Shown: piece after piece, positions 122-39,882 of the stretch
Numbering within the stretch: the stretch's first letter is position 1
Layout: every line of letters begins with the position of its first letter
Source: Asterias rubens
Lineage: Eukaryota
DNA: 64,000 bases
Direction: 5' to 3'
Assembly (NCBI RefSeq): GCF_902459465.1
Contig: NC_047075.1
Span: forward strand, 3,038,001 to 3,102,000
Made by a program: the position numbers and the translations under genes
The notes under the pieces: model-generated
Told to the model about the DNA's origin: nothing
The model's input: only the letters and a program-made list of their open reading frames with translations
Databases searched by the model: none

Positions 122-2897
122 CGGTGGTCCCTTCATTTCACAATTGGGACCCCAGTCATGGCATCGTGGCGTACGGTGAGCATGGCTCAAGTGGAATCCC
201 AGTAAAGCACCAACGGCCAGAATAGTCAAGAAAACAAGGAGCGAACAAATAGTGCCCTTTGTCCAGAACGGTCGACGAACCACGACTTCTTTCTCCAGCT
301 GTAGGAAAATAATTTCAGGTTCAGAAAAATTTAAGCTTCAAGAGAATAATGAAAGAAATAATGCCTTTAACAATGGTCTGCTGGCCAAATGCCAATTCAA
401 GGGGTTGGGTACTGTTTTGTATGACACAAAACACAAACGTTCACAGATTTACATGAAACTGAACACGGTTTGAAGATAAGAATGGTGGAAAGCTTCCCTT
501 AAGCTTTCCTGACACAAAAATAGTTTTGTTTTCAACGAGAACATTGCTCTTTGATTTTCAGTTCTTTTAAAAAACTTCAGAACTAATGAAGCTGAAACTT
601 CTTTAAAAAGGTAAATTATTATTAAAAACATCTTCATTTACAGTGTGTAAAACAACAACATACGTATCAAATCCCTTTAAAGGCACTGCAGCCGATTTCA
701 CAAAACGCTAGGATTAATCCTAGTTAGGGCGAGTAACTCAGCCGAACTTAGGATGGGTTCAATGCGTCCTAACGTCTATGAATACGGAACACAACTCACT
801 CTAAGTCCTAAGATTATCCCTCAGTTAAGGAAGAGTTTGGTGAAATCGTTGGCTGGAAGAGTTTGGTGAAATCGTTGTCTGGACATGTATGGTAATTGTC
901 ACAGACCAGGGCCCAATGGCTCTGCTTACCGTAAGCACCGAATCGGCGCTTACAGTAGCAGAGAATTCTGTGCTTACGGCAAGCGTATTTCACGGGTAAG
1001 CGGCGAATTTGGGCTTCTGCGCGTGCGTACTCCACGTTACTAGGCATTCTACGCTTACAAGGCTAGCGCAGAAATACGGCGCTTGCACGTAAGCTGGGAA
1101 TCGCGATCGTAAGCGCAGAATTCAGCGGTAAGCAGAGCCATGAAACTGGGCCCTGTATGTTTACTGGGTGTATCTCAACATTTCATAAAATAAAACCTGT
1201 GAAAATTTGGGCTCAATTGGTCATCGAATTTGCAATAGAACAATGAAGAAAAAACAACCTTGTTGCATTACATGTATACTTTGTGTGTTTTCAGATGCAC
1301 AACAAAAGGCTTTGACAGCTGAAGTCTTTTAATACTCGAGTGAGAAATTATGTCTTTCTCGAAAACTATGTTACTTCAGAGGGAGCTGAGAACCAGTCAG
1401 AATTCACCCAGCTTTAAAGTTCAACCTCCCCCCTCCTCTGATCTTATTGCATTACTCCCACGCTTTTCCGGGCAAACATGGGTAGGCCTAATTGTTCTAA
1501 TTAGAGTCAATTAAACAGATGCTGGTATTAGGCGGCTGCAAATGTCAAAAAACCATTAGCTTAATTGTGTTGTCCATCCTCGTTCTTTATATACAGTCTT
1601 ATCATCTCAAACAAAGAAGGCACATAAATCATCAGAACCATGGAGGAAAAAAATTACTAGAACCAATAAGGCCAAATAAAAAAAAATACCAGTTGATTGT
1701 CCAGACTTTTCAAAAAAGAGGAGGATGAGGGCCTTAATTACTATTTACTATTTTTTTTCAAGATGGCCGCTAAGTTTCAAATCAAAAACATAACTTTTTT
1801 TTTTTTTTAATACAAAAATCGAAAAATAGTAAATAGTCAAAAAAAGATGCGGGCGGGGACGATCAACTGATATTTTTTTTTAATTGGCCTAACTTATATT
1901 GTACATGTATTGACCCAATTCACCCGACGTCATCATCAGAATAATCTTGGTTTTTGGATGGGCCATTTTGGGGGTCAAATGTCACTGTGCGCTCTTCAGT
2001 GAAGTGCGCATTTTAGGCGACGCAGAATTAACACATAAACCTATTGACCCATTTCACCTGACGTCATCATCAGAATAATCTTGGATGCGCCATTTTGGTG
2101 GTCAATGTCAACGTGTGTTATTCAGTGAAGTGCGCATTTTTAGTTAGGTGACGCGGCGTTTACACGTAAACCTATTATTGACCACCAACGTGGTGAGCGT
2201 GGCATCAGTCGCAGCGTGTGACGCGCGTGCAAGGGGTCAATTGACCAACTGTCTTAGTTTGGTATATAAATAGACCAGACCAGAAACTTGGGGCTCTACT
2301 GTGTACTCATTTAGGAAAAGATTCTGTATTGCGCCACCACTCAGTCATACAGAAAGTTAGTTATCCCTCACTTTTTTAAGTTGTTGACAACGTAATGCAA
2401 ATGTCAAAATTTAGGTTAGAGCCTAAGTTCAAGTTGTTACTCACCCTGGGTATTCTAGTTTTTGGAAAAGTCTCCGTATGGCGCCACCACTTTTTCATTT
2501 GATATTAAATAATATAGTATCTAATTAACCTCATTGAGATATCCCTTTTTGTAAAAATGAGTGAAAAGGTGGTGGCGCCATACGGAAAGTTATCCCTAGT
2601 TTTTTAGTAGCTACTTAATCAGGTTAAATATAGAGTAGGTAGTCAGAAATAATAATTAATTTCCAATTTAAATACTTATTATTATAAATTAATAAAAGAT
2701 CATGGATTAAGAATAGATGCATGCTGTATAAGTAAGGCCTACAGTGTAACTTTTTGTTTCTAAATTCTACCTCCATGGTTTTAATAAACGTGAGTACTTA
2801 CGGGAATTTCGACAACGCTACATGGTATTGGTGGTAGTTTCTTCCCGGTGTCCTTAGCGTAGAGCTCCGGAGGAGGTGCTACCGTCAATTTCACCAT
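122..2897 (-). CDS. Paralog Y of the uncharacterised type II membrane protein family (3' part runs off the window). Coding exons 2897-2802 and 298-122.
   Basis: Exon 1 MVKLTVAPPPELYAKDTGKKLPPIPCSVVEIP|gtaagt (96 nt). Exon 2 after ttttcctacag: LEKEVVVRRPFWTKGTICSLLVFLTILAVGALLGFHLSHAHRTPRCHDWGPNCEMKGPP|gtatgt (177 nt, phase 0-0), with a hydrophobic TM stretch. Same architecture as the four other paralogs. Confidence 0.8.
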
Positions 2898-3416
2898 TTT
2901 CACACCCGTCAAGTTGTTCCAAATTGCCCCCTCGATCCCGGAACTACGAAAGCAACGTCTTCAAGATTTTTTTTTTCGGAACTCTCAATCAAAATAGATG
3001 AAACCGGATCTATCATTTACACTTCACATGTGAACTCTGCAGTTGATAATTTGCTTTTTAAAGGGCAGAAAATGACAGCTCAGCTCAGCGTGTTTATGTG
3101 CGTGTGTGTGTACACTCCATGGTACACAACAGCACGGATGTGGTGATGATGCGTGTACTTTTTTTCGGGTTACATTCCAGTCCGGAAACCGCCTCTACAC
3201 TTTGAGTCCGTTTATCACGTAATGGGATCATTTCTGATTGGGCTTGGCAGCCAGACTGCATTTAGCAGAAGGCTCAATAATTATGCAAATGACCACCATT
3301 TTTTGATTGATCGCCAAGAATAATGATGTCATAAAATAAACTTGCGACCTCGATTTTTGTCATGACAGTCGCACTAGCTAGTGTCAATATTATAGGTAGT
3401 TGGGCTGGCAATAGGT

Positions 3417-3808
3417 TTAAAGGCAGTGGACACTATATTTGTAATTGTCAAAGACTAGCCTTCACAGTTGGTGTATCTCAACATATGCATAAAATAACAA
3501 ACCTGTGAAAATTTGAGCTCAATCCGTCATCAAAGTTGCGAGATAATAATGAAAGAAAAAAACACCCTTGTCAAACGAAGCTGTGTGCGTTTAGATGGTT
3601 GATTTCGAGACCTCAAGTTCTAAATTATGAGGTCTCGAAATCAAATTCGTGGAAAATTACTTCCTTCTCGAAAACTATGGCACTTCAGAGGGAGCCGGCG
3701 TTTCTCACAATGTTTTATAACATCAACCTCTCCCCATTACTCGTCACCAAGAAAGGTTTTATGCTATAATTATCTTGAGTAATTACCAATAGTGTCCACT
3801 GCCTTTAA
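3417..3808 (+). mobile_element. TTAA-flanked non-autonomous DNA transposon (Kolobok-like MITE, family 1)
   Basis: TIR ttaaAGGCAGTGGACACTAT...ATAGTGTCCACTGCCTttaa. TTAA TSD with RR..YY termini matches Kolobok. Confidence 0.85.
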
Positions 3809-3967
3809 TGCGGATTTCGCAGTCAATAAAAAACCCTGCCAATTGTTTATTTTGAATATGACTCGAAAAAAGAATTGGAGTTTAGTTGTTTGCAACTGCT
3901 TTTACAACCAAAAAAGTCCCTCAAACAAATTGGCCTAAGTTAACTGAGTTTCGACCCTAGCACTCGA

Positions 3968-4689
3968 NNNNNNNNNNNNNNNNNNNNNNNNNNNNNNNNN
4001 NNNNNNNNNNNNNNNNNNNNNNNNNNNNNNNNNNNNNNNNNNNNNNNNNNNNNNNNNNNNNNNNNNNNNNNNNNNNNNNNNNNNNNNNNNNNNNNNNNNN
4101 NNNNNNNNNNNNNNNNNNNNNNNNNNNNNNNNNNNNNNNNNNNNNNNNNNNNNNNNNNNNNNNNNNNNNNNNNNNNNNNNNNNNNNNNNNNNNNNNNNNN
4201 NNNNNNNNNNNNNNNNNNNNNNNNNNNNNNNNNNNNNNNNNNNNNNNNNNNNNNNNNNNNNNNNNNNNNNNNNNNNNNNNNNNNNNNNNNNNNNNNNNNN
4301 NNNNNNNNNNNNNNNNNNNNNNNNNNNNNNNNNNNNNNNNNNNNNNNNNNNNNNNNNNNNNNNNNNNNNNNNNNNNNNNNNNNNNNNNNNNNNNNNNNNN
4401 NNNNNNNNNNNNNNNNNNNNNNNNNNNNNNNNNNNNNNNNNNNNNNNNNNNNNNNNNNNNNNNNNNNNNNNNNNNNNNNNNNNNNNNNNNNNNNNNNNNN
4501 NNNNNNNNNNNNNNNNNNNNNNNNNNNNNNNNNNNNNNNNNNNNNNNNNNNNNNNNNNNNNNNNNNNNNNNNNNNNNNNNNNNNNNNNNNNNNNNNNNNN
4601 NNNNNNNNNNNNNNNNNNNNNNNNNNNNNNNNNNNNNNNNNNNNNNNNNNNNNNNNNNNNNNNNNNNNNNNNNNNNNNNNNNNNNNNNN
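3968..4689. other. Assembly gap (run of N)
   Basis: 722 consecutive N between paralogs Y and Z. Confidence 1.
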
Positions 4690-5601
4690 GTGTAATAACA
4701 GATGGTGCCTATGAAGGTTTATATTGTCGTGACCTTTAGAAGTGATTCTTTTCGATTTTGATATCCGCATGAATTGTTCCCTTAGCCTATTGTTAATTCT
4801 GTAAGTAATAGTGCCTGCCTAGAAATAAACAAATAGCAAAAAAATAAGACGTGTTCTATTGCAAATGGTATGAAATCATTTTATACTATTTCAGATCATA
4901 CTTTTTTGAGTCATTTTAATCAAATAGTGTAAATTCAGAAAATATCATTCAAAACTGCTTACCACCGTCATGGCTACTAAATGTACCGTACAAATTTGCT
5001 GAGTGACCTGACCGATCGAAAAACGAATGGTACAATTGGTAAAGGGTGCATTTATTCTAACCCTCTAGTTGCCAAGAAACACAACATTAATCATAAAATG
5101 CTCGTTTTCGGAAATTAATTTCAATAAAGTCATCAGGAAAAAATATACTCATTGTTAAACTTTTAAAGTTTGACATTTTGTTACGAAGAATTTTTGTATT
5201 CATAATACACAGTTTCTGTTGATTATATGCAAAATTTGAATATCTTACGAATACATTTGAATACATTTACTTCGCGAACTTTTTTTTACGAATACAAAAT
5301 TAATCAGATTTAAAAACATGCGTGTCAAAATACTTAGATAACAGAAAAGAAAATAATATGTAGTTTAAAACCAATTCTCCATACACATAAACAGTACACA
5401 CAAAAAATCCAGCATTGCCAAGAAGACAAGTAATATATGACTGTATCCTATTTCACGTTTAGAGTTACTCTTTGGAGGTAAAGGTTTAATATTTAAAAAA
5501 TAACGAGACAAGACAAAAAACTGTCCACAATAAACTACTGGACAGCGGTTACACCTTTTTTTTTTTTATTTAAGGACGGCCACGTGAGAATCTTGCCCAG
5601 T

Positions 5602-8600
5602 TTACGGACGCCCATCTGGGTAATGATGCCCCTCGTTCCCTGTACATTTGTTGACAAGTAAAAAAAGTTTAAAATAAAAGATCAGTATGTATAGCCACAA
5701 TGTTAAGGGTCAGGGTATTATGACAAAGTGAAATTGTTCATAAAATTGTAATAGGCCTTTTGAACTGTATGAAATCATAATTCACTAGGCCTGAGCCAAA
5801 ATAATTTATTACAAACTTTCCCAATAAACACTATAATTGTTTCCCAAGTTCCCACCCTAATTCCAATCCCATAATATTCAAGAATGGTGCAATTGGCTTT
5901 TCGAAGATTACATTTGTTTCATTCCAATCGCTGTAGTTTTCAAGAAACACACCATTAAGGGCAGTGGACACTATTGGTAATTGTCAAAGACTAGCCTTCA
6001 CAGTTGATGTACCTCAACATATGCATAAAATAACAAACCTGTGAAAATTTGAGCTCAATCGGTCATCAAAGTTGCGAGATAATAATGAAAGAAGAAAACA
6101 CCCTTGTCACACGATGTTGTGTGCGTTTATAGATGGTTGATTTCGAGACCTCAAGTTCTAAACTTGAGGTCTCGAAATCAAATTCGTGGACGATTACTTC
6201 TTTCTCCAAAACTATGGCACTTCAGAGGGAGCGGTTTCTCACAATGTTTTATACCACCAACCTCTCCCCATTACTTTTCACCAAGAAAGGTTTTATGCGA
6301 ATAATTATTTTGAGTAATTACCAATAGTGTCCACCGCCTTTAAGGGATGACACACAGTTATTTTCGGTTAGAGCCCATTCATTCCAATCCTCCATGTTTT
6401 GAGAAACATCATCAGTTTGTTGTGAAAGAAAAGACACATCATCATAAGGAACGGCCTAACATCACTCGTTTTCGGAATATTGTAAGAGACCAGGCTGCGC
6501 TGGGCCCAATTTCATAGCGCTGCTTAACGGTAAGCAAATTTGCGTGCTTACTGTAGCAGAACAACTTGCTTAAGCCTTAGCGTATTTCACAGGTTAGCAG
6601 AAAAATTTGGCGGCCGTATTGCGTGTTTACCGTGGATTTGCATTGTGACGTCATTTATTTTCGTCCGGTAAGCACCGGAAGGTTAGCATGCCTTTTCGTG
6701 TGCTTACGGTTAGCAGCGCTATGAAATAGAAATTGCAAAGTATAAGCACAAAATCGGCCGCTAAGCAACGCTATGAAACTGGGCCCAGGGGTGGATTTCA
6801 CAAAGAGTTAGGACTAGTCCTAACTTAGAACTAGTCCGCTAGGAGATATACAAATAGGAGACTTTCCAACGCTAGGTGGCAGCAGACATACCGGGTAAAT
6901 TTCCATTGTTTACGTAGTTCTGAACATGCGCATAATTCTGAGAACAATAGATTTACCCGGTAAGTCTGCTGCCCTCTATCGTCCCAGAAAGTCTCCCATT
7001 GCATGGATAGTCCTAAGTTAGGACGAGTAACTGGTCCTATACAACTCTAGATAAGACTATGAAATTGGACCCTGGCGTTAACTTTACTCGTACTACTTTT
7101 GCACCAGACAGGCCTAACTACCAAATATTTTTTATTGTACTGTATATTTTCAAATACATCGTTATTTTTCAATGGATACCGTAAAACTTACCATGATGCT
7201 GGCCACTCGCATCGGTCCAGTCACCCGGTGTAGTTGATTCATTCTGCCGAAAAAAAGGACAATATTTTGCGAATTATTACATTTATTTTTATGGATCCAT
7301 GTATAATTATGTAATGTAGTGATTCATGAGTATGGTTCCCCTGTGCACAGCATACGTGTTCAAAAAAATTGTGTTTTAAGACGGGGCCAGTCTGTGTTTA
7401 ACCCAGTCTCTATATTGCGAAAGCGTGTTACATACAATTGCCAAACTGTCACGAAAAATACGTCGAGCAAAAAATATCAAAATTTACACTATGTGTTAAA
7501 ATAAAACACCATTAAAAGATAAGATGTACAAACATTCTGCAAATATTGTGTGCCTTCCGATACTTGATTTTGAGACCCCATATTCTAATTCTGAGGTAAC
7601 ACAATCTAGGTCGGGGAAAATTAATTCTTCCTCGAAAACTACGTTACTCCTTTCAGGAAGCCGTTTCTCACAATGTTTTAATCAACAGCTCCCCATTACT
7701 CGTTATCAAGTAAGGTTTATGCTAACAACTATAAAGGGTAATTACCAACAGTGTCCACTGTATTTAAAGGCAGTGGACACTATTGGGAATTACTCAAAAT
7801 AATTGTTAGCATAAAACCTAACTTGGTGACGAGTAATGGGGAGAGATTGATAGTATAAAACATTGTGAGAAACGACTCCCTCTGAAGTAACGTAGTTTTC
7901 GAGAAAGAAGTAATTTTCCACGAATTTCATTTCAAGACCTCAGATTTAGAATTTGAGGTCTCGAAATCAAGCATCTGAAAGCACACAACATCGTGTGACA
8001 AAGGTGTTTTTCTTCCATTATTGTCTCGCAACTTCGACGACCAATCGAGCTCAATTTTTCACATGTTTGTTATTTTGTTTGTATGTTGATATACACCAAG
8101 AGAGAAGACTGGTCTTTGACAATTACCGATAGTGTCCAGTGTCTTTAAGTAGCGACTTACCAGGCAATCTGAACCGAAGAACTGATGGAATTTTGATATC
8201 ATAACAATGAGTAACAAAGCTCCCATAGCGAGTATGAAGATCAGTGTAATGGAAGGTATCACGCTTCGGTAGCGGGGAAGACTGTGAAGTCTCACGGTCA
8301 GCTTCGGTTTGCTCTTCTTCTGTTCTTCCACTTCCTTTGAAACAAAAAGAAAGAGCGAAGCTCATTGTAATAAAACATAATAACAATCCAAGCATTCCTA
8401 AATACCTCAGACACAGTTTCGCTATTCCTGTTGGTGGAGTACGCGTCACGTGGGTGTGTATAAACCTTTGTTTATGACCAGTACAAATTGTTGAAACATG
8501 GGCGTGACACGCGAGCTTGCACCCGTTCTTATATATAGCTGCTTCGGATAGTAACAAATGCAATTTTAGAAACACTTCACTCGAAGTTGTTTTGAATAAA

Positions 8601-9000
8601 TAATAAATCACCTTTTATCCCCAAAATAAACAAATTTATATAAAAAAATCCAAAAGGGATATTAATTATTTCTGCGTGGAAACAGGCTGGTATAAAGGGA
8701 CATAAACTCGGAGCTGGTAACAGCCAAATCTTTCTCATAATAACATTGGTTTAACATGCTATATGGTTATGAATCGCACATAATTATCATTAAAAGGTTA
8801 TTCCTCAGTGGCTATTAGCCTATATGCGAGTACCAGTTTCTAAACACGGATGGCTGCAAACATACGCATTTCTAAAAGTAGTCGTAAAAAACACACACAT
8901 TTTTTTACAAATATTTAGTACTTACCGGAATGAGCATTTCTGACATTTCAAACTGTTTATTCGTTGTGTCCTTCGGGTTCTCAACAGTTACAAGCACCAT
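5602..9000 (-). CDS. Paralog Z, about 112 aa type II membrane protein. Exons 9000-8926, 8334-8161, 7243-7192, 5639-5602.
   Basis: MVLVTVENPKDTTNKQFEMSEMLIP | EVEEQKKSKPKLTVRLHSLPRYRSVIPSITLIFILAMGALLLIVMISKFHQFFGSDCL | NESTTPGDWTDASGQHH G| NEGHHYPDGRP*. All junctions are GT-AG with phases 0,0,1. The last exon is the least certain (weaker polypyrimidine tract). Confidence 0.75.
5955..6343 (+). mobile_element. Kolobok-like MITE family 1 copy
   Basis: Same TIRs and internal sequence as 3417-3808. Confidence 0.85.
6501..6787. mobile_element. MITE with gggcccaatttcat..atgaaa(t/c)tgggccc TIRs (also about 908-1155, 16304-16556, 60880-61168)
   Basis: Terminal inverted repeats with recurring cttaccgtaagc-type internal palindromes. 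Confidence 0.75.
7764..8148 (-). mobile_element. Kolobok-like MITE family 1 copy (an adjacent copy at about 7512-7767 shares the TTAA)
   Basis: TIRs at both ends, inverted internal orientation. Confidence 0.85.
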
Positions 9001-15093: not shown

Positions 15094-15612
15094 CTAATAT
15101 GATGGTGGAGCGGGGGGAGGTGGACCTCCTAAATTACAAAAAGACACAAAAGGAAAAGCCAATAATTATTAGGAGATAAATACAACTGTTATTATCTTCA
15201 GTATGGACAACTACCAGTGCTCATAGCGCTGCTTAATGGTAAGCAAAAACTGTGTGCTTACTGTAGCAGACAAATTTGCTAAGGTGCAAGCGTATTTGAC
15301 AGGTAAGCAGAACAACTTAAAGACCATTGCACATTCACCGTGTTTTTGTTTGTTACGTTATTTAATTTAGTGCAGTAAGCACCGGAAGGTCATGTTCAGC
15401 AGCGAAATGGAAATCGCACAGTAGTAAGTACAAATCGGCCGCTAAGCAGCTCTATGAAATAAGCCACCGACTTTACTTTTAAGCAAAGATACTAGCGAAT
15501 TGACTTGAACAAAAAAATGACACAAAAAAATGATTTCTGAAAGTTTGTATATTATACTCAGCGCCTTGAGTACCTTGTTTGGTAGATACGTGCGCTATAT
15601 ATAAGACTTTGA

Positions 15613-15657
<45 letters not shown>

Positions 15658-18600
15658 CATCTGGTTACAACACTGGCAACTACTCACCGTCGTGATGACT
15701 ACCGTCGTGGTCACCGCCTCGTCGACCACCATCATGGTCGCCATCAGGGCCGCCACTTTGGCCGCCACTATGGCCGCCACTATGGCCGCCACTATGGCCA
15801 CCACCATGACCGCCGCGGCGGCTGCCATCTTGGTCGTGGCCATCCCGATCCATATCGCCGTCTGGGTGGTGGCGACCGTCACGCTGGTCGTCGGGGCTCA
15901 TGCCGAAATCGTGGTCTCCGTCCAAGCCGTCAGCCCAGTCGCCACCGTACAACTTGTCGATTAACCCACCATCGTCAATACGCTGCTGTGAAGCAAAATA
16001 ATGGTAAATTCTGTTAGTTGAGACTAAGCTCGGTTCTGAAAAGGTTGCGGGTTCCAATCATAGAGCTATATGCTCTATGGTTCGAATCAATTTGACTCCC
16101 ATAAATGGCCGACCGTGTTTGTCGACAAGGTAAAAAGAAAACCACGCAATTTCGAGTGATACTTGTGTGGATCATTATATTCTACTTTTAACAGATCTTT
16201 CTAATCATATGTATTTTATAACAAACGGTTACAAACGCTTTTCAAAGACTAACTCGACCGATCCAAGGCAACGTGTTCCTTCACGACTCAACAATTCAAT
16301 CAGTAGGCCCAATTTTATAGAACTGCTTAAGCACAACATTTTGCTTAAGCGAAAAAATCCTTGCTTTTTAATAGTAAAATCACTGATTCCCGGCCAAGAC
16401 TCCACTCAATTCTTATGCTTAGTAAACAAAAGCTAAATACCAGTCACAAGCAATGTATATGGCATGACATTTCTGCCAGTAATATGTGTAAAATAAGCAA
16501 GATATTTTCGTGCTTAAGCAATTTTTTTCTTAAGCAGCTCTATGAAATTGGCCCCTGGTCGTCTTCAGGAGAATTCTGGACTCTTTTGCTGGATGCTGCT
16601 TATAAGTACTTGACTCAATGTTCTTCTAGTTTTTTAAATTTGAGCTCGACTGGTCGTCGGAGTTGCGAGATATGATGAAAAGAAAAAAAAACACCATTAT
16701 CACACGAAGTTGTGTGCTTTCAGATGCTTGATTCAAATTCTAAATCTGAGGTCTCGAAATCAAATTCGTGGAAAATTACTTCTTTCTCGAAATCTACTTC
16801 ACTTCAGAGGGAGATGTTTCTCACAATGTTTTATACTATAAACCTCTCCCCATTACTCGTTACCAAGTGAGGTTTTATGCTGATAATTATTTTGAGTAAT
16901 TACCAATGCCTCAATTCTTGATTTGTGCAATTCATAATCATAGACGTTAAAGGCACTGGACACCTTTGATTGTCAAAGACCATGCCGTCTTCTCATTTGG
17001 TGTATCTCAACATTATTGTATGCATAAAATAACAAACCTGTGAAAATGAAGAGCTTAATTTGTCGTCGAAGTTGCGAGAGAATAATGGAAGAAAAACAAC
17101 CTCGTCACACAAGTTGTGTGATTTCAGCTGAGGTCTCGAATTCAATTCAAGTATTTTTGTGAAAAATGCCTTTTTTCCTTTCTCAAAAACTACGTTACTT
17201 CAGAGGGAGCCGTTTCTCACAATGTTTTACACTACCAACAGCTCTCCGTTGCTCTTCAGTAACTACCAGTAGTGTCCCAAAAAATATACATCTGAAATGT
17301 GATCAATGCTTCAATTACTTACCCTGGTGTCACAACCGTAACGGCGATACAAGCGGAACCCCACAAGGCAACCAAGGATTGCCAGAGTACCAACGAAACA
17401 CACGACAACCACCGAGATCTTGACTCGCCTAGTGCAGCATGATGACTTGGCCCGGGGCGGTGCCGTCTGCTGTGAAAAAAAGGACGGTGCAGTATTTTAC
17501 TAAAATTGTTCAATAACAACTGTTTTCATGCAAAAAAGTAGTTAATGGCTTGACGTTTCGACCCTAGCAGAGTCTTTTTAGAAGTGTTTTAAATACCAAA
17601 TTATAAAACCACAAAGTAACACTTTTGTTCACCAGAATTTTTTTTTTAAATATCATTTTCCTCGTTCATGGTATTGAATACATCATACAAAGACGAGTTC
17701 TGAGAACTTTTTTTTAAACAGCTACCTGAGCGGAATGCTTTCAACAGAAATGGTATTTTTACTTGTTTATAATGCACTTGTTCACCATTTTAATGTAATT
17801 TTGACATGTGTACACTTCTGAACTTTTCGTAATTATCGATGAAAAAATCAGGCCCCTACCTAAAGGTTTTTTGAAAAACTAAAAACACTTCTGCCGTTGA
17901 GAGCGGGCGTCAAAGGACAGTGCCGCTGACGTCATTTGGGGGAGTTTGCTTTGTTATACATCCACGCTGCAACAAAGCGGCTTTATCTACTTATGACGTT
18001 TTGAGAGTGATTACGTAACGGGGCTTTTCGCAAATCTCGCAGAAAAGCTCTGGACAAGGGCATACAAAATGATTGTTTTTTTTTACACTATTGAAACCTA
18101 TTTATAATCATATGACTCGATTTCCTAATTCATCGAAAACATTTAAAGTGGAATTCAGCAAAGTTCACGACTTGACATTTTCGTTCAAGCAGGTCTTTAA
18201 CATTAACAATAGGCCTAAAGATATATAAAAAATAATACAAACAAATTATACAAAACTTGAAGGTCTATAGATACCTTATTTCATTGATACACAGAAAACC
18301 CAAACATTTGGCCCTGGTCACGACTCAAATTAATTTCTATATTCATTTAGTAAGCCTAGTTGAAGATTTTTAGGAATGATATTTCGGCCATTGGAAAGAA
18401 GCAAGAAAAACATCATTATTGGGAACAGGGGATAACCTACATGAGGTTTTTCCTGAGCAGAAAACAATCAGACTACATTAGGAAAAATATCATGGGAAAA
18501 TTAAATTTAAAACAAGAAATTGTATATAGTTTACTCAAAATGTGATAATGGTAAAAATCTGAGAAATTACTGAGGGCAGAAACAACATCAGAAATTAGAC

Positions 18601-24641: not shown

Positions 24642-27600
24642 TTATTCTACATAGTCGACTATCTGGGTCATCTCTGGCGGAACAACGATGATTCCTGGAA
24701 AAAGAAAAAAACACACAAACCAATCAATAAATTAATTTGCTTTTTGTTAAATGATGTATTCATAAATTCATACGTCATAGCTAATGACCCTTGACCTGTT
24801 AAGTTTATGAAAATACATGTCCCAACATGGTGACGTCCAATTAAAGCCATTATTCGGAACAGACATTTTTTTTTTTTAATTCACACAGATTTACAAATAA
24901 CTTACAGGGTTTACAGAAGGTAATGGTGAAAGACTTCTCTTGAAATATTATTCCATGAAATGCTTTACTTTTTGAGAAAACATTAAAACAATATCAATTC
25001 TAGATATCGAGAATTACGGATTTTTTTTTTTAAACACATGTGTCATGACACGGCGAAACGTGCGAAACAAAATGTGGGTTTTCCCGTTATTTTCTCCCGC
25101 CTCCGATGACTGGTTGAGCCTAATTTTTCACAGGTTTGTTACTTATATTATACGTTGTGAAAGACGAAGTGTGGGCTTTGGTCAATACTGTTTACCGAAA
25201 GTGTCCAATGGCTTTAGGTGTTTTTTTTTCTTCAATTCAATTAGGTGTATTATTTAGGTGTATTATCTCAAACAATAGGCCTAAACGACAGAAGTTAACA
25301 AGACTTAAATTGACGTGTTTACACTGTTAACAAGTTCAACGTGTGTATTTGTCTTTGTCCAGACATGTTTCATCAAACGGAGTAAAAGTCAAACCAATTA
25401 TTACTAAAGTTTTCTCGTTTATTCTGATCAAAACTATTTTGGTATGGACAAAATATCTTTGTTAAAAACAACAACTTAGATAAGTTCAATTACCAAATGG
25501 GATTCGTTTGTTTTGCTATGTACTATCCAACTAGATGCCACGCTTTTCATAAAATTTCCTGTTTTTGTCATTTGCCAATTAATTCTCTTTTCGTATCGTT
25601 CTAAATGTAGTTGGTTTTACCAGTAGTTTGCTTTGTACATTAAAAGTAACTTGAGAAAAAATTTCTCCTCCAATGGAAAAAAAAAATTGGGAAAAATAAA
25701 TAAATAAAATGTTATGTTACTACAGTTTTCGGGGCACACTGCGCAAAATGACAATCCTACTGCACTATTTATACTGTAGAGCTGCAAGCAGAAAATCATT
25801 CCGGCAGTGGACACGTTTGGTAATTATTGTCAAAGACCAAGGGGCCAAATCACAAAGCAATACAACTCATCATAAGACCAAATTGTCAGTATCGCCATAG
25901 CAATTTGTATTGTGACATCACACTTTACTTAGCAACTAAGATTGATTTGCAGTTACAATCGATCTTAGATCGGCCCCTGGACACATTAGGTGCATGTGTA
26001 ATAGTCAAAGACCAATCTTCTCACTTGGTGTATCTCAACGTATGCATAAAATAACAAATCTGTGCAAATTTGGGCTCAATTTGGTTGTCGAAGTTGCAAG
26101 AGACTAATGAATGGAAAAAACACCCTTCTTGTACAAATTGTTGTGTGCTTTCAGATGCCTAAAAAGGGCTCCAGTTTTTTTTAGTGAGAAATGACCTCTT
26201 TCCCAAAGACTGCGTTTTGAGTTCGATTTTTGTTTGTTTGGTTTCGTATTTCCAAATATCACAAATTAATAATCATAATAACAAACAAGCATTAGGTTAC
26301 TTCAGATGGAGCTGTTCCTCACAATGTTTTGTACTAGCAATGGGTGCGTTCGTTTAGCTTCCCTGGGTCAACCCCGCGGTGCTCACTCGGGTGAGCCCCT
26401 GACAAGAGCTAATCGAACGATCACTCGCCCTCTCGTGGTGACGTCATGCACCTGTAGCCAGCCCCCAAGTGACCCACTCCACAAGCAGGGCACTGTGGGC
26501 TGACCCGGGTGAGCCCATGGAAGGCTGTCAAAGCTATTTGAACGCATCGGGGCAGACCGGGAATGACCCAGGGAAGCTAAACGAACGCACCCAATGTGCG
26601 CTCTCAATTGCTCGTTACTAAGTAATTGTGTATGCTAACAATAATTTCACATGGCGTTCTTGTTTAGGAGATTCCCAGTTAAATTCGACGTATATTTGTA
26701 TATGTATAAAGCCAACTTGCGGATAAGGACAGTGGACCAGTTTAACATTAAGTAGGATTTGAAACTTTGCATGGTGGAAATACGAAATGGAAAGGTTTGC
26801 GGAAAAGCTTTCTCCAGAAGAGGAACAGAGCATAGGCCTATATACTGATCGAAACGTCGAGTTGAAACCAACGGTTCTCAGTGAACGATTTCCCTTGTAT
26901 AGCAGTTGCTATTAAAAAAAAGATGCACTTTGGCACTTGCTACTCTATGACCATTCAGTACCTACAAATTTGTTCACAGTCAAAATATTTTGCTATGCAA
27001 AATTAAAATGCTGGATGAAATCGTTCCCTGGTTCTTTTCAGAACCACCCAAACTCCTTTGAAATAGAGGTAGTCATTTCATGGTGTTACCGCAAACCTTT
27101 CTATACAGTCTATCATTTACACACCTAAAGGTTGTCCGGGTACGTGCTCGCCGCTGGGGTCAACTTGTTGACTTCCCGCTTCACCAAGGGGGCCGCCATC
27201 TTGCCATTCCCCTTCATACTCATGTCCGCCATCTTGCCACTCCCCGTTCATGATGTTTTCAATAATAGTCACGCTTGATCCAGACGAACTATAATCAGAT
27301 GATTGAATGACGACGTCATCATGATTCCACACTGAGAAATCACTCTGTCAGATCAAACGAAAAAAATATAAATTAATAATCACAGAATCACACTTTTTAT
27401 ACACTGAAGAATAAGTAGCCGACATCTTGGATTGAATTTCATAAGCTTCAAAGGACCTCTCAAAAATGGGAGACTTTGGAACGCTAGGTGGCAGCAGACT
27501 TACCAGGTAAATTTCCATTGTTTACGTAGTTCTGAGCATGCGCACTTTACCGAGAACGATGGATTTTACCTGGTAAGTCTGCTGCCACCAAGCGTCCCAA

Positions 27601-30600: not shown

Positions 30601-30764
30601 TTTTTGTTTTGATTCCTCTTGGAATAGAAATAAATGTCTAAGAAATGAAATGAAATACTGAGAAAAGATGAACTCACCTGCAAGACGACAACTGTGCTAT
30701 CAGCGGGTGGAGGCAGTTTCAACGCCTTCTCTTTCGGATTATCTGTCACCCCTAATTGAACCAT
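24642..30764 (-). CDS. Paralog C, about 185 aa type II membrane protein. Exons 30764-30678, 28184-27987, 27344-27125, 24694-24642.
   Basis: MVQLGVTDNPKEKALKLPPPADSTVVVLQ | STAPPTAKKSCCTRRVIICISVTCFLLAMTIACVLLALYVRRDSCLTYWGPCEPYYLDFSDDIVYD | SDFSVWNHDD...GEWQDGGHEYEGEWQDGG...GQPL G| IIVVPPEMTQIVDYVE*. Clear similarity to paralog A in exons 1-2. The exon 3 donor (gtgtgt) is weak, so the frame may instead end at TAA 27117. Confidence 0.8.
26342..26592. mobile_element. MITE gggtgcgttcgtttagcttccctggg...cccagggaagctaaacgaacgcaccc (also about 36250-36490, 59395-59645)
   Basis: 26-bp TIRs, three copies in the window. Confidence 0.8.
27845..27976. mobile_element. 132-bp MITE with 7-bp TSD (tattact)
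   Basis: TIR ctagtcttggtgcaaga..tcttgcaccaagactag extended by ttctcgtttccctttcacgcacaccg / cggtgtgcgtgaaagggaaacgagaa. tattact occurs at 27838-27844 and 27977-27983. Confidence 0.8.
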
Positions 30765-35366: not shown

Positions 35367-38300
35367 TTATTGTGGGTTTTCGTGGTGTGGGAAGGGCCTG
35401 TGTGGTCCACCTGTGAAAAAGCAAGACAATTACTTTTAGGTAAAAGAGTTTTGACACTATGTTTGTGTAAGTAAATGGCATAGAGATATTTGAACAACAG
35501 TTATAGGTTTTCCTGGCTCTCAACATCATGCACACAGTAACAATTAAACCTGTGAAATTGATTGTGGTCGTCGAAGTTGCGAGACAATAAAGGATGAATT
35601 TTTTTTAAACACCCTTGTCACACGAAATGTTGTGCTTTCAGATGCTTGATTTCGAGACCACAAAATCAAATATTTTAGTGAGAAATAACTTCGTTCTCGA
35701 AAACAAAGTTACTTCAGGGAGAGCCGCTTCTCACAATGTTGTATACTATCGACATCACTTCATTGATCGCTAACAAGTATGTAAGTTTTTATGTTTACAA
35801 TCATTTTGAGCATACCAATAATATCCTGCAGTGTGCTAAGTGATTCGACTCACCAAATTAGCAATCAATGGTCATTTAATCAGATTGTTCAATTTTATTA
35901 GGCTGTAAGACTAATTCAGTTTCGTAAAGGCTAGCAGTAAGAGCTTATCAATCATTCAATTTCATTAAGTGTAATAGCTGGCAGAAATTCAACTTAAAAA
36001 GAACGACCGAAGAAAGAAACGGCAATGACTGAGAAACGATACTGAATAAAAAACGAAATAGTGTGAAACGAAAGTGAATGAATTGATAGCTTAATAAAAG
36101 AAACCCTTTTGAGTGCACATTCAAACCGGGGACCTATGACGAAAGAGAACAATTTTAGAGCCCACGGTTCGGGAAAAGTCCACAGTTGGAAAACGTGTAC
36201 AAAACCAATGGGAGCTGTTGCAAAACAAAGTTTCGAGTAGTGGTAAAGGATGTGTTCGATTAACTTCCCTGTGTTGAACCCGCGGTGCTCACTCGGGTGA
36301 GCCCCTAATCAAACGATCACACCCGCCCTCTCGTGCTGACGTCATGCACCTCGGGCCAGCCCCAAGTGACCCAATCCACCAGCAGGTCACTTGGGGCTAA
36401 CCCGGGTGAGCCCATGGTATGACGTCAGAGCTACTCGAACGTACCGGGGGCAGATGGGGGTCGACCAAGGGAAGCTAATCGAACGCATCCTTAAAAGATG
36501 GACAATCACTGATGCAGGCGTATACACAAGCTTGTGTGAGTTGCTTAAGGGTTGAATACATGAATTTGATGGCGTATTTTACAAATTTACTTTTGGGGGT
36601 GAAATTGGCGGGAAAACCTACCGATTGGCCAACCGTCATGGTGATCATCCCCGCCCTCTGGCCCGCTGTGGTGGCCGCCGTGATGGCCGCCATCATGGTG
36701 ACCTCCATGGGGGCCGCCATGTTGGCCTCCATGATGTCCGCCACTATGTCCGCCACTATGGCCGCCAGGGTGGTGCCCTTGCTGGTCGTCATTGTCGTAG
36801 TCGGGGAACTCTGGCGCAGACGATTCATCTGGGTACACAACATCGCCCTCTTGTGGTTTCTGGTTATAACAAAAATGGTTTTGTGTGAATTTTAGTCAGC
36901 CTTGTACAGAACGTCATAAGCTTAAATAGCGCACTCTCTGTGGTTGAAGGAAGCGCTACTATTTGCTGAAAGTTGTGAATGGGCAGATGTTTCCAATGTT
37001 TGACCTTAGCGCTCGCGGCCGACACAAGGGGTCTATTAACAATATTTTTGTCTCAAGTTTTGTAAAGCATGACGCATAAAAATAAGATGTAACTATAAAT
37101 AGATAACATCTTGCGGGTACAACATGCAAAGCTTATCTTTGACCATGTTTGCATCGCAAAAAGCAAAGTGTTGTAAAAGCAAAAATGAATAGTAAATTTA
37201 TAATTGTCAAAGTTAGTCTTTAATCACGTTAGGCCAAATTGTTGCTTTACTATTGTTTATTTTAATCACTTCACATTATGTGTACATGTACGAGTGCATT
37301 GACTGCGAATCTCCGTACAAAATCAATGCGAGATCAAAGGTTCCTCTGGGACCATCCGGTCAGGCAGGTATACGAGCCTCAAGAGTGTGACGTCAGGTTG
37401 TCAGGCTTGGATGTGCAGTCTAACAGTGAACTGCCACAACATATCAATTTCATCTTAGAAAAAGTAATCAATGGGATACTTTGGAACGCTAGGTGGCAGC
37501 AGACTTACCAGAATGTCCATTGTTTACACAGTTCCCATCATGCGCACATTACCGAGAACAATGGATTTACCTGGTAAGTCTGCTGCCACCTAGCGTCCCA
37601 AACGTATCACATATAACTTACTGGTCCATAGAGGCAAGCGGGTTGAGCCAAGAGCACCCACAGGGCCACCCCACTGACGGCCAGCGCGAGCAACACCCCC
37701 AATACGGTCAGGATGACGGCACACTTGCGACTGCAGCACCCGGTACGTTTCACCTCGACCACGGTGATTGTTGTTTCGTCTTCCAGCTGTAAAAAAGAAA
37801 ATGAATACCATCATCAAACTCGAAACTATTCTGTTGTGAAGTAGAGTGTGGTAGTTCACATCAAGGCCTTTAATGTGAGACTTTGGAACGCTAGGTGGCA
37901 GCAGACTTACCAGATTAATTTCCATTGTTTACGTAGTTCTGAGCATGCGCTCATTACCGAGAACGATGGGTTTTACCTGGTAAGTCTGCTGCCACCAAGC
38001 GTCCCAAAAGTCTCCTGTTCAGTTTGTTTAGATGATCTTCCCGACAAGGGAACTCGGCAAACTCCCACAAGGGGATATAAACACCAAGCTGGCAACAGCC
38101 AATCTCTCTATATACAAACATTGTAAAATCAAGAAATTGTGATTCAGTATAAACTAGACAATACCGATACTCTAGTCATTCAGGTTTAAAGACACTGGAC
38201 ACTATTGGTAATATTGTCAAAATCCAGTCTTCTCACTTGGTGTATATCAACATTATGCATAAAATAACAAACCTGTGAAAATTTGAGCTCGATTGGTCGT

Positions 38301-39882
38301 CGGAGTTGCGTGATAATAATGAAAGAAAAACACCCTTGTCACACGAAGTTGTGTGCTTTCAGATGCTTGATTTCAAGACCTCAAGTTCTAAACTCAAGGT
38401 ATCGAAATAAAATTCGTGGAAAATTACTTCTTTCTCGAAAACTACGTCAGAGGGAGCCGTTTCTCACAATGTTTTATACTATCAACCTCTCCCCATTACT
38501 CGTTTAAAGCGAGGTTTTATGCTGATAATTGTTTTGAGTAATTACCAATAGTGTCCACTGCCTTTAATTAGCGGTTAGTATTGAATGGCTTCGAACCCGC
38601 AACCTTGTGATTACAAGTGTGCATTTTAACCATTTGACCACGGTGTAACCAACACTTAGTCTAGGCCTATTCTTTAACCCATATCATACAAAAATCGAGA
38701 TTCTATTTAGAATTACATGCATCAAGAATGCATTGTTTCCCCAATCAGGGAGATTTAAAATGTGTTCGTCAGAACATGGACAGATTGGTTTATCTTCAGG
38801 GAACTTTCTGCAGAATCAATCAGGGAGAGGATAACTTTCCGTATGGCGCCACCACTTTTATTCACTCATTTTTACAAAATGGGATATCTTAATTGAGGTT
38901 AATTAGATACTATATTTATTTCATATCGAATGAAAGTGGTGGCGCCATACGGAAACTTTTATTTCTACCTTTAAGTCAAGAGTGGCTTTTACTTTAGCTT
39001 TGTTTTGGCAGTTCTGCAATAGACATAGGCCTATCGTCGACTACCGAAGCCATCGACCGCCTCTCCACGCATATAGTTGGTATTGTTTGCATTTATTGAT
39101 TTATGATCAATAGTCAATGAAACACCTTTGTACACAACAATGCCATGACTGTTTCTGATACTACATCCTAATGGACTTTGAGCATGCATTGCTTTCCATA
39201 CATTGTGGGTGATTTTTAGGTAGGGACTGAAGTGCCATGGGTGCACCCACAATGTTTTCAACAGGACAGATAAAGAAGAACATGGATCATGGGCAACACC
39301 TGGGGAAGCCCACAATGTCGCACTACTTAACAGTGTTGCTGCGTGTATGTATCTAGACTACTGTTAAACGTTCATGTGAGGTACTGGACACATTTGGCAA
39401 TTGTCAAAGACCGGTATTCTCACTTGGTGTGTCTGTCAACATAATAACAAACCTGTGAATATTTTGACTGAATTGGTCATCGAACTTGCAAGAGATTATA
39501 AATGAAAGAAAAAAAAAACAATCTTGTTGCACAAAACGTGTGTGCTTATGCATGATAAAAGGCTTCATGCCTGAATTGTCTTTTAACATTTGAGTGAGAA
39601 ATTACATCTTTCTCTTAAACTACGTTACTTTAGAGGAAGCCGTTTCTCACAAATGTTTTCAACCTCCCCATTGCTCGTTACTATACCAAGTAAGTTCTTA
39701 TGCTAACAAATAGTGTCCAGTGACTTCAATGCTACAGATGGGCCTGTTAGAAACAAGTACAAAATGGAACTTACTGGTAACTCCACCATTGTGCTCTCGT
39801 CCAGCGGCCATGTCTTCTTCTGGTCTTTTAGGCCGTGCTTTTGACCGTCTGGGTCGGCGGCATATACTGCTAGCTGGACCAT
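35367..39882 (-). CDS. Paralog B, about 184 aa type II membrane protein with a His/Gly-rich ectodomain. Exons 39882-39775, 37786-37622, 36859-36622, 35410-35367.
   Basis: MVQLAVYAADPDGQKHGLKDQKKTWPLDESTMVELP | LEDETTITVVEVKRTGCCSRKCAVILTVLGVLLALAVSGVALWVLLAQPACLYGP | KPQEGDVVYPDESSAPEFPDYDNDDQQGHHPGGHSGGHSGGHHGG...HHDGWPI G| GPHRPFPHHENPQ*. Donors gtaagt/gtaagt/gtaggt, phases 0,0,1. Confidence 0.85.
37875..38014. mobile_element. MITE gagactttggaacgctaggtggcagcag...ctgctgccac..gcgtcccaaaagtctc (also about 6855-6998, 27467-27608, 34200-34320, 34558-34700, 37475-37608)
   Basis: About 140-bp TIR element, at least six copies. Confidence 0.8.
38186..38567 (+). mobile_element. Kolobok-like MITE family 1 copy
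   Basis: Both TIRs and TTAA present. Confidence 0.85.

What the first reader, a model, noticed from the sequence alone, without database searches (positions are those of the whole stretch)
122..39882. Hidden tandem family of five small type II membrane proteins with hypervariable His/Gly/Asp ectodomains
Five co-oriented genes about 10 kb apart share an exon plan: an MV(Q/K/L)(L/V)xV start exon, often with (D/E)NPK, ending in P or Q at phase 0; a phase 0-0 TM exon; and, in the four complete copies, a phase 0-1 low-complexity exon and a short Pro-containing last exon. N-termini are conserved (MVQLKVSDNPKD, MVQLGVTDNPKE, MVLVTVENPKD, MVQLAV, MVKLTV), while the presumed ectodomains differ radically in length and composition. 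Basic residues before the TM and the absence of a signal peptide suggest N-in/C-out topology. I recognise no known domain. A conserved anchor with a diversifying, metal-ligand-rich surface tail suggests a lineage-specific cell-surface system, such as metal handling, biomineralisation or defence (inference).
Basis: partly seen in the sequence, partly recalled or inferred. Interest (0 to 1): 0.88.

Follow-up and report, generated by a model that had tools for sequence, protein, structure and literature searches.

The report
Starfish histidine-rich membrane protein gene cluster
Five neighbouring starfish (Asterias rubens) genes encode small single-pass membrane proteins with a conserved anchor and a fast-changing, disordered acidic tail, histidine/glycine-rich in most copies; the family is real, expressed and shared with other starfish, but its function is unknown.

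Summary
Five minus-strand genes (ATGs at 39882, 30764, 20008, 9000, 2897) share one four-exon plan. Exon 1 begins MVxLxV and ends in phase 0. Exon 2 carries basic residues, usually Cys-Cys, a transmembrane helix and a Cys (phase 0-0). Exon 3 is low-complexity (phase 0-1). The last exon is short and contains Pro.

RNA contigs confirm every junction of genes 3 and 4. Public gene calls on the Asterias rubens assembly match my models for genes 1-3 (184, 185, 189 aa). The genes are therefore annotated as uncharacterised, not hidden.

The N gap (3968-4689) lies between gene 4's stop (5602) and gene 5's ATG (2897). No coding exon crosses it.

Homologues turned up only in starfish (Patiria miniata, Acanthaster planci). 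Acanthaster has four co-oriented copies directly after the same MAM/LDLa gene, so the array predates the split of these starfish orders.

Pfam, PDB and the ESM Atlas give nothing. AlphaFold2 predicts one confident helix and disorder elsewhere. The N-terminal flank of the helix is more positive in 9 of 9 proteins, which favours N-in/C-out topology.

The proposed function, a membrane-tethered cation-binding surface tail, is inference only. This is an uncharacterised starfish family of moderate interest.

The parts
39775..39882 (-). Gene 1 exon 1 (36 aa, begins MVQLAV; phase 0 end, GTAAGT donor)
   Evidence: The gene call on record spans 39882-35367 with a 184-aa product.
37622..37786 (-). Gene 1 exon 2 (55 aa: basic residues, Cys-Cys, transmembrane helix, Cys)
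36622..36859 (-). Gene 1 exon 3 (238 nt, phase 0-1; acidic start, then a His/Gly array built from a 12-nt tandem repeat)
   Evidence: tandem repeat at 36672-36767
35367..35410 (-). Gene 1 last exon (14 codons with Pro/His, then stop)
   Evidence: product length 184 aa matches the gene call
30678..30764 (-). Gene 2 exon 1 (29 aa, begins MVQLGVTDNPKE)
   Evidence: identical to P0001
27987..28184 (-). Gene 2 exon 2 (66 aa: Cys-Cys, transmembrane helix, C..WGPC motif)
   Evidence: AlphaFold2 gives a helix at residues 39-77; 10-residue blocks spanning residues 41-70 have mean pLDDT 86-97.
27125..27344 (-). Gene 2 exon 3 (220 nt, phase 0-1; acidic, Ser- and aromatic-rich tail, few His)
24642..24694 (-). 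Gene 2 last exon (17 codons, then stop)
19919..20008 (-). Gene 3 exon 1 (30 aa, begins MVQLKVSDNPKD)
   Evidence: An RNA contig joins 19919 to 17469 with no mismatch in run X2.
17323..17469 (-). Gene 3 exon 2 (49 aa: Cys-Cys, transmembrane helix, Cys)
   Evidence: RNA joints 19919/17469 and 17323/15985
15688..15985 (-). Gene 3 exon 3 (298 nt, phase 0-1; Asp-rich, then a (GGHS)n block from a 12-nt repeat of 5.6 copies)
   Evidence: RNA joints; tandem repeat at 15748-15814
15094..15128 (-). Gene 3 last exon (ends ...PPPPAPPSY, then stop)
   Evidence: RNA joint 15688/15128 in runs of two organisms; 189-aa gene call
8926..9000 (-). Gene 4 exon 1 (25 aa, begins MVLVTVENPKD)
   Evidence: The 1096-nt RNA contig in X1 lies on 9044-8925.
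8161..8334 (-). Gene 4 exon 2 (58 aa: basic residues, transmembrane helix, Cys)
   Evidence: The same contig lies on 8333-8161.
7192..7243 (-). Gene 4 exon 3 (52 nt, phase 0-1; 17 codons, begins with an N-E-S sequon)
   Evidence: Predicted from splice signals. It matches the 53 unplaced letters of the contig and the local depth in X1.
5602..5639 (-). Gene 4 last exon (...NEGHHYPDGRP, then stop). 10 of 12 residues match the last exon of Acanthaster copy 4.
2802..2897 (-). Gene 5 exon 1 (32 aa, begins MVKLTV)
122..298 (-). Gene 5 exon 2 (59 aa: transmembrane helix, C.DWGP.C motif). Later exons lie beyond the start of the window.
3968..4689 (.). Assembly gap. It is intergenic, lying between gene 4's stop and gene 5's ATG. 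It was not filled.
44307..49860 (-). 3' part of the neighbouring MAM/LDLa gene. This is a synteny anchor, not a family member.
   Evidence: tblastn matches collinear with Acanthaster L002:1-4452

Best explanation
This is a tandem array of a gene family so far found only in starfish (Asteroidea). The proteins are small (112-290 aa) and cross the membrane once.

Shown:
- The five genes share a four-exon plan with conserved intron phases.
- Genes 3 and 4 are transcribed and spliced as modelled.
- The array lies directly after the same MAM/LDLa gene in Asterias and Acanthaster.
- The only confidently structured element is one hydrophobic helix. The rest is predicted disordered.
- The exon-3 His/Gly arrays of genes 1 and 3 are built from 12-nt tandem DNA repeats; across the family exon 3 differs greatly in length and composition between paralogues and orthologues.

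Inferred:
- The helix acts as a signal-anchor with the N-terminus inside the cell (type II topology).
- The roughly 45-residue N-terminal tail (MVQLGV..., a Lys/Pro stretch, a VVV-x-P stretch) is cytoplasmic.
- The Cys-Cys before the helix is a palmitoylation site.
- The Cys after the helix forms a disulphide outside the cell.
- The acidic, His/Gly/Asp-rich tail is displayed on the cell surface. There it acts as a flexible polyanion that binds divalent cations: Zn, Cu or Ni through His, and Ca through Asp.
- Repeat slippage retunes the tail's length and composition in each copy.
For: Gene structure and expression.

Homologues and synteny:
- Patiria P0004 and Acanthaster P0006.
- Four Acanthaster copies of 177, 205, 290 and 148 aa with the same four-exon plan and phases, directly after a MAM/LDLa gene.
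- The window matches that MAM/LDLa gene collinearly at 49860-44307.
- Patiria has a gene-1-like copy upstream of P0004.

Topology:
- Within 15 residues of the helix, net charge is higher on the N side in 9 of 9 proteins.
- Cys-Cys or Cys lies 3-6 residues before the helix, and one Cys after the helix aligns in 8 of 10 family members.
- Tyr residues flanked by acidic residues occur in the tails, resembling sulfation sites. There is one sequon in gene 4 and three in Acanthaster copy 3.
- Atlas feature neighbours include type II proteins (SLC3A2 N-terminus, pneumovirus G), at scores of 0.67-0.74, which is a lead only.

Disorder: AlphaFold2 gives a helix at 39-77; 10-residue blocks spanning residues 41-70 have mean pLDDT 86-97, and the model's listed low-confidence segments (residues 1-11, 25-31, 77-132, 134-185) are below 50. 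The Atlas model of P0004 has pLDDT 0.46.

Composition of the complete tails (genes 1-4 and Acanthaster copies 1-4; gene 5's tail runs off the window): net charge -4 to -21, His up to 19 %, Gly up to 35 %, Asp up to 23 %.

Repeats: 12-nt repeat arrays lie inside exon 3 of genes 1 and 3.

Divergence: exon-3 identity in ortholog pairs is 11-47 %, against 29-81 % for exons 1-2. Exon 3 ranges from 17 to 192 residues.
Against: - Topology was not tested experimentally. The positive-inside margin is small in genes 3 and 5.
- Gene 3 ends in PPSY and Patiria P0004 ends in ...HPPYRR. These resemble PPxY motifs that bind cytosolic WW domains, which would suit a tail inside the cell.
- Genes 2 and 4 have few His residues, so 'His-rich metal binder' does not describe every copy.
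- Metal binding is inferred from composition alone.
- I have no tissue or cell-type information, because run metadata are coded.
- The Patiria ossicle proteome reports no proteins with acidic repetitive regions (PMC5460417).
- Restriction to starfish rests on one phmmer search. That search could not even detect the more distant starfish paralogues.
Confidence: 0.55

Rival explanations
1. Opposite orientation (N-out/C-in). The short N-terminus faces outward without a signal peptide, as in PMEPA1-type proteins. The His/Gly/Asp tail would then be cytosolic, and its C-terminal Pro-Tyr motifs would recruit Nedd4-type WW-domain ligases or buffer cytosolic zinc.
For: Gene 3 ends ...PPPPAPPSY and Patiria P0004 ends ...HPPYRR. 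Basic residues also follow the helix in gene 3.
Against: The N flank is more positive than the C flank in 9 of 9 proteins. The Pro-Tyr motif is absent from genes 1, 2 and 4 and from Acanthaster copies 1-4. The Cys-Cys next to the membrane on the N side looks like a cytosolic palmitoylation site. Acid-flanked Tyr residues and N-x-S/T sequons in the tail suit a luminal location.
Confidence: 0.12
2. The proteins are surface or matrix-facing proteins of skeleton-forming cells. They would control calcite ossicle growth, serving as a starfish counterpart of the acidic repeat proteins of sea-urchin skeletons.
For: The tails are acidic, repetitive, disordered and fast-evolving, as is usual for biomineralisation proteins. 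PMC5460417 reports that starfish lack spicule-matrix-type C-lectin repeat proteins and MSP130 in their skeleton, which leaves a functional niche open.
Against: The same paper found no proteins with acidic repetitive regions in Patiria ossicles. However, a membrane protein need not become occluded in mineral, and His/Asp repeats give poor tryptic peptides. There are no expression data from skeleton-forming cells. Sea-urchin P16 has a different architecture, with an N-terminal signal peptide and a C-terminal transmembrane helix.
Confidence: 0.15
3. The proteins are membrane-anchored precursors. Their ectodomain is shed or cut at dibasic sites to release Gly/His-rich peptides with antimicrobial or antifungal activity, analogous to shepherins or histatins.
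For: The family is tandem and rapidly diversifying, as is typical of immune effectors.
Against: Dibasic sites that bracket the repeat occur only in gene 3. The tails have net negative charge, whereas most antimicrobial peptides are cationic. There is no evidence of induction or cleavage.
Confidence: 0.1
4. The pattern is a chance arrangement of open frames or non-coding repeat DNA, and these are not genes.
For: Low-complexity repeat DNA often leaves long open frames. Exon 3 of gene 1 is open in two frames.
Against: Spliced RNA contigs exist for genes 3 and 4. Gene calls on record are identical in span and length. Exon phases and N-terminal peptides are conserved in two other starfish genera, with conserved synteny.
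Confidence: 0.02

Closest known systems
Sea-urchin P16 / P16-related skeletogenic membrane proteins
   Same: Small, echinoderm-restricted, single-pass membrane proteins. From my own knowledge, untested here: an acidic low-complexity region.
   Different: P16 has an N-terminal signal peptide and its transmembrane helix near the C-terminus (bioRxiv 10.1101/2023.03.22.533866). The starfish proteins have no signal peptide and a helix at residues ~45-70, followed by the long tail. I held no P16 sequence, so similarity was not tested.
Vertebrate histidine-rich glycoprotein (the automatic name given to Patiria XP_038053493.1)
   Same: Tandem five-residue His-rich repeats. Patiria has (DRHDG)n. From my own knowledge, HRG's His-rich region binds Zn and other ligands.
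   Different: HRG is a secreted plasma protein with cystatin-like domains and no membrane anchor (own knowledge). No Pfam domain was detected in the exon 2 and exon 3 peptides scanned. The resemblance is compositional only.
Sea-urchin Sp185/333 (SpTransformer) immune effectors
   Same: An echinoderm-restricted gene family encoding diverse proteins (PMC3342357, listed). From my own knowledge: tightly clustered small genes with Gly-rich and His-rich regions.
   Different: Sp185/333 genes have two exons (PMC3342357 abstract). From my own knowledge, they encode secreted proteins with a signal peptide. Here there are four exons, a signal-anchor helix and no leader. No sequence relationship was found.
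Type II signal-anchor proteins with Cys residues next to the membrane (SLC3A2/4F2hc N-terminus, pneumovirus G, influenza neuraminidase stalk)
   Same: A short cytoplasmic N-terminus, one helix, and an extended or disordered stalk. These are the nearest named feature neighbours in the Atlas and in the PDB profile search.
   Different: Scores are at chance level (Atlas 0.67-0.74; PDB E = 0.67). There is no homology. Those proteins carry folded or heavily glycosylated ectodomains.
Prion protein octarepeats and other surface His/Gly copper- or zinc-binding repeats
   Same: A membrane-tethered, disordered His/Gly repeat displayed on the cell surface. This is a functional analogy from my own knowledge.
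   Different: PrP is GPI-anchored and has a folded C-terminal domain (own knowledge). There is no sequence relationship.

Membership tests
Any Pfam-A family | A match at or above the family's gathering score | tested here: not met
   Five exon-2 and three exon-3 peptides were scanned. The best hit was MHYT at 18.6 bits against a cut-off of 21, lying on the transmembrane helix only. The precomputed Pfam field is '-' for P0001, P0004 and P0006 and for all called family genes.
Histidine-rich glycoprotein | Cystatin-like domains and secretion through a signal peptide | tested here: not met
   No Pfam domain is on record for P0004. The N-terminus MVQLGV... is followed by charged and polar residues, and the only hydrophobic stretch lies at residues ~45-70.
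PP1 regulatory subunit 10 (the automatic name given to Acanthaster XP_022094124.1) | TFIIS N-terminal domain and PP1-binding region | tested here: not met
   No Pfam domain is on record for P0006. The similarity can only come from the His/Gly/Arg/Asp repeats.
Sea-urchin P16 family | N-terminal signal peptide and a transmembrane helix near the C-terminus (type I) | tested here: not met
   P16's architecture comes from bioRxiv 10.1101/2023.03.22.533866. Here the helix lies at residues ~45-70 of 112-290 and there is no leader. Sequence similarity was not testable because I held no P16 sequence.
Type II (N-in) signal-anchor membrane proteins (a topology class, not a homology family) | No cleavable signal peptide, one hydrophobic helix, and more positive charge on the N-terminal flank | tested here: met
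   One window of 21 residues with Kyte-Doolittle mean 2.3-2.8 per protein. Net N-flank charge exceeds net C-flank charge in 9 of 9 proteins. AlphaFold2 gives a single helix.
Type II (N-in) signal-anchor membrane proteins | Experimentally shown luminal or extracellular C-terminus | not testable with these tools
   This needs tagging, glycosylation mapping or protease protection.
The starfish MVQL-anchor family defined here | Four exons with phases 0 / 0-0 / 0-1 / 1; an MV-x-[LVI] start; basic residues with Cys before the helix; a short last exon with a Pro motif | tested here: met
   Asterias genes 1-4 are complete and gene 5 shows exons 1-2. Acanthaster copies 1-4 meet it. Patiria P0004 and the neighbouring exon 3 also fit.

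The most novel reading that the evidence does not exclude
Starfish evolved their own family of membrane-tethered, repeat-expanding His/Asp/Gly ectodomains. These would act as the cell-surface cation- or mineral-handling layer of skeleton-forming or epidermal cells. They would fill the role taken in sea urchins by the spicule-matrix and MSP130 proteins that starfish skeletons lack. The conserved cytoplasmic MVQLGV / VVV-x-P tail would couple the layer to an unknown intracellular partner.
Probability: 0.15. Interest if true: 0.7.

Novelty: new variant of a known kind. Interest (0 to 1): 0.4.

Why it matters
Starfish build a calcite skeleton without the repeat-rich matrix proteins known from sea urchins, and little is known about genes restricted to starfish. 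This conserved, expressed tandem cluster encodes membrane-anchored acidic tails, most of them histidine-rich. It gives a concrete, testable candidate for cell-surface metal or mineral handling, or for defence. It is also a clean example of a conserved anchor joined to a tail that evolves by repeat slippage. In addition, the automatic names on the public orthologues ('histidine-rich glycoprotein-like', 'PP1 regulatory subunit 10-like') come from amino-acid composition and are misleading. If the tails prove to have no specific function, this is simply another lineage-restricted low-complexity gene family.

Tried and rejected
- **Exon 3 of gene 3 against the 5.8-billion-protein index.** 2260 word-sharing candidates, none at E <= 0.001.
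- **Pfam on eight exon peptides.** Nothing at threshold.
- **ESM Atlas with gene 2 exon 2 and with P0004 residues 1-105.** Best scores were 0.81, with no informative family.
- **PDB profile search with A1.** Only chance hits.
- **Profile search with A1 in the word-indexed library.** The only addition was P0007, a protein with a signal-peptide-like start and (DHHDG)n repeats. I judged it a compositional match, not a relative. P0003, is an unrelated 684-aa repeat protein from a metagenome.
- **My interim conclusion that gene 3 is unannotated.** It was missing, although it should score E = 2e-5. One search overturned this: a 189-aa product is on record at exactly that place. Why the protein libraries do not return it remains unexplained.
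- **Shared promoter words.** No 7-mer is shared by at least 4 of the 5 regions 400 bp upstream. Random segments share 0.8 on average.
- **Rfam over the whole window.** No match at gathering score.
- **Literature.** Searches for the accessions, and for His-rich starfish proteins, returned nothing relevant.
- I did not hand the full spliced proteins of genes 1, 3, 4 and 5 to the database tools. They have no reference form, and typing them was discouraged.

Full report

Their ATGs are at 39882, 30764, 20008, 9000 and 2897. Each first exon runs in frame into a consensus donor, GTAAGT or GTGAGT.

I scanned all six frames of the 64 kb window for MV-x-[LV]-x-V followed by an in-frame consensus donor 20-45 codons later. 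This found exactly these five sites. Three other matches to the hexapeptide have no donor. The pattern is far beyond chance.

The window's single run of N is at 3968-4689.

**Gene models**

From splice signals and open frames I built four-exon models.
- Exon 1 is 108, 87, 90, 75 and 96 nt in genes 1-5. All end in phase 0, on Pro or Gln.
- Exon 2 is 165, 198, 147, 174 and 177 nt, phase 0-0.
- Exon 3 is 238, 220, 298 and 52 nt in genes 1-4, phase 0-1.
- The last exon has 11-17 codons.
- The products of genes 1-4 are 184, 185, 189 and 112 aa.
- Gene 5 leaves the window after exon 2, which ends at 122, the start coordinate of the finding.

**Independent support for the models**

Gene 3: RNA-derived contigs show CT..AC joints, which are GT..AG on the minus strand. 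The joints are 19919/17469, 17323/15985 and 15688/15128. One 210-nt contig in run X2 crosses the first junction without a mismatch. The last junction is also present in runs of a second, related organism.

Gene 4: a single 1096-nt contig in run X1 lies on 9044-8925, 8333-8161 and 5638-5450. Between these pieces are 53 letters that were not listed as a placed piece. They fit the predicted 52-nt exon 3 at 7243-7192. The depth in that bin (8.5) is what a 52-nt exon at depth 19.6 would give. The contig carries 561 more letters 3' of 5450.

Gene 2: the spliced product is identical to P0001, 'uncharacterized protein LOC117299362 [Asterias rubens]'.

Genes 1-3: the gene calls on record for assembly GCA_902459465.3 give products of 184, 185 and 189 residues, with the same spans as my models.

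The genome is therefore Asterias rubens. The genes are already called, as uncharacterised proteins, so 'hidden' is not accurate.

**The assembly gap**

Gene 4's stop codon ends at 5602 and gene 5's ATG is at 2897. The gap at 3968-4689 lies in the spacer between them, and no coding exon of any model crosses it. If the gene 4 contig is collinear with the genome, its 3' UTR would end near 4890, still short of the gap. A further short exon or copy inside it cannot be excluded.

**Relatives**

A full HMMER scan of 1.84 billion representative proteins with P0001 gave only two full-length relatives.
- P0004 is Patiria miniata XP_038053493.1, 243 aa, named 'histidine-rich glycoprotein-like'.
- P0006 is Acanthaster planci XP_022094124.1, 205 aa, named 'serine/threonine-protein phosphatase 1 regulatory subunit 10-like'.

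The scan also returned two read-through fragments of exon 1 and one unrelated repeat protein. A profile search with the three proteins added only a compositional match, P0007. The automatic names reflect His/Gly/Arg/Asp repeats, not homology.

The Acanthaster locus (L002) holds a MAM/LDLa gene followed by four co-oriented genes without Pfam hits, of 177, 205, 290 and 148 residues. I reconstructed all four. Each has the same four-exon plan and phases, an MVQ[LI] start, basic residues with Cys before a helix, an exon 3 rich in His/Gly/Asp, and a short last exon.

The 3' part of that MAM/LDLa gene matches the window collinearly from 49860 down to 44307 on the minus strand. Gene order and orientation are therefore conserved between Asterias and Acanthaster.

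In Patiria (L001), a 220-residue gene whose exon 3 resembles that of gene 1 precedes P0004. A frameshifted relic of an exon 3 follows it.

From my own knowledge of starfish classification, Asterias belongs to a different order from Patiria and Acanthaster. The array would then be old within the class.

Apparent orthogroups are:
- gene 1 with Acanthaster copy 1 and the Patiria 220-aa gene;
- genes 2 and 3 with Acanthaster copy 2 and Patiria P0004;
- genes 4 and 5 with Acanthaster copies 3 and 4. The last exon of gene 4 and that of Acanthaster copy 4 agree at 10 of 12 residues.

**How far the 'starfish only' claim goes**

With P0001 as query, the more distant family members (Acanthaster copies 1, 3 and 4, and Asterias gene 1) would score E > 0.1 in that library. 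The search could therefore not have seen equally distant relatives in other echinoderm classes.

The same calculation says gene 3 should have appeared at E = 2e-5. It did not, although a 189-aa product is on record at its place. I cannot explain that.

**Anatomy of the proteins**

Each protein has one strongly hydrophobic 21-residue window, with a Kyte-Doolittle mean of 2.3-2.8, beginning at residue 45-58.

AlphaFold2 on the three-sequence alignment gives a single helix at residues 39-77. The 10-residue blocks spanning residues 41-70 have mean pLDDT 86-97, and the model's low-confidence segments (residues 1-11, 25-31, 77-132 and 134-185) are below 50. The Atlas model of P0004 has a mean pLDDT of 0.46.

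Pfam, PDB and Atlas searches find no family.

The alignment of exons 1-2 from ten members shows these conserved features:
- Met-Val-Gln-Leu-x-Val at the start;
- conserved Lys, Lys-Lys and Pro positions;
- a Val-rich stretch before the exon 1 boundary;
- Gly-Cys-Cys-Thr-x-Arg-Val before the helix;
- Leu/Ala/Gly positions inside the helix;
- one Cys 8-12 residues after the helix.

**Topology**

Within 15 residues of the helix, the N-terminal flank carries more net positive charge than the C-terminal flank in all nine proteins analysed. They are related, so this is not nine independent trials.

Other features fit the same orientation but do not prove it:
- the Cys-Cys on the N side sits where cytosolic palmitoylation sites usually lie;
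- the tails hold Tyr residues flanked by acidic residues, which resemble tyrosine-sulfation sites;
- there are a few N-x-S/T sequons.

Against this orientation, gene 3 ends in PPSY and Patiria P0004 ends in HPPYRR. These resemble cytosolic WW-binding motifs, but most members lack them.

**The variable tail**

Beyond the helix the complete tails (genes 1-4 and Acanthaster copies 1-4; gene 5's tail runs off the window) have net charge -4 to -21. His reaches 19 %, Gly 35 % and Asp 23 %. Genes 2 and 4 are poor in His.

The His/Gly arrays correspond to 12-nt tandem DNA repeats: 15748-15814 with 5.6 copies in gene 3, and 36672-36767 with 7.8 copies in gene 1. Patiria instead carries about 20 copies of a DRHDG unit.

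Exon 3 ranges from 17 to 192 residues. Its identity in ortholog pairs is 11-47 %, against 29-81 % for exons 1-2. A short acidic-hydrophobic Tyr-Pro motif at the start of exon 3 is shared by gene 1, its orthologues and Patiria P0004.

The description of a conserved anchor with a rapidly changing tail is correct. Repeat slippage is the likely cause.

**Function**

Nothing here measures function. My best inference is a membrane-tethered, disordered, cation-binding surface tail. The rivals are:
- a cytosolic tail, if the orientation is reversed;
- a specific role in ossicle formation;
- release of Gly/His peptides by cleavage, since Arg-Arg sites bracket the (GGHS)n block in gene 3 only.

The Patiria ossicle proteome paper reports no proteins with acidic repetitive regions (PMC5460417). 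This counts weakly against an occluded matrix role.

Sea-urchin P16, the nearest echinoderm analogue I know, has an N-terminal signal peptide and a C-terminal transmembrane helix (bioRxiv 10.1101/2023.03.22.533866). That is a different architecture.

In the contig sets, gene 3 pieces have word depths of about 570-4900 and the gene 4 contig 19.6. These depths are poor measures of expression, and the tissues are not known to me.

**Verdict**

The family is real, expressed, conserved in synteny across starfish, and without any known domain. It is already annotated as uncharacterised, and its function remains open. I rate it a new variant of a known kind, namely a lineage-restricted, tandemly duplicated, low-complexity surface protein family, of moderate interest.

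Noticed in passing
window 44307-58782 (-): A large MAM/LDL-receptor-class-A gene lies directly upstream of the array. Its 3' exons match the Acanthaster neighbour at 44-84 % identity, in collinear order.
   Followed up: partly
window 32104-32719: A 74-bp tandem repeat of 8.4 copies at 91 % match lies between genes 1 and 2.
   Followed up: no
window 15613-15657: A perfect (TAT)15 microsatellite lies in the last intron of gene 3, just after exon 3. RNA and DNA contigs show 3-base length variants nearby, at 15549/15550.
   Followed up: no
window 19965-19988: One X1 RNA contig of gene 3 exon 1 differs at four positions in 100 nt, two synonymous and two replacing (Leu14Val, Asp15Val). It may be an allele or come from pooled individuals.
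   Followed up: partly
Rfam at gathering score finds no RNA family anywhere in the window. I did not run the more permissive E-value search.
   Followed up: partly
L001 18225-18492 (+): Patiria miniata carries a frameshifted relic of a His/Asp-repeat exon 3 about 5 kb downstream of P0004. It is probably a decayed duplicate.
   Followed up: partly
window 15094-20008 (gene 3): A 189-aa product is on record at this place. Yet neither large protein library returned it, although it should score E = 2e-5 against P0001. This is unexplained.
   Followed up: partly
window 5938-6425, 7768-8133, 16610-17333, 18601-19324: The introns hold highly repeated elements, with contig word depths in the 100,000s to millions in every run, RNA and DNA alike. 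These are interspersed repeats rather than exons.
   Followed up: no
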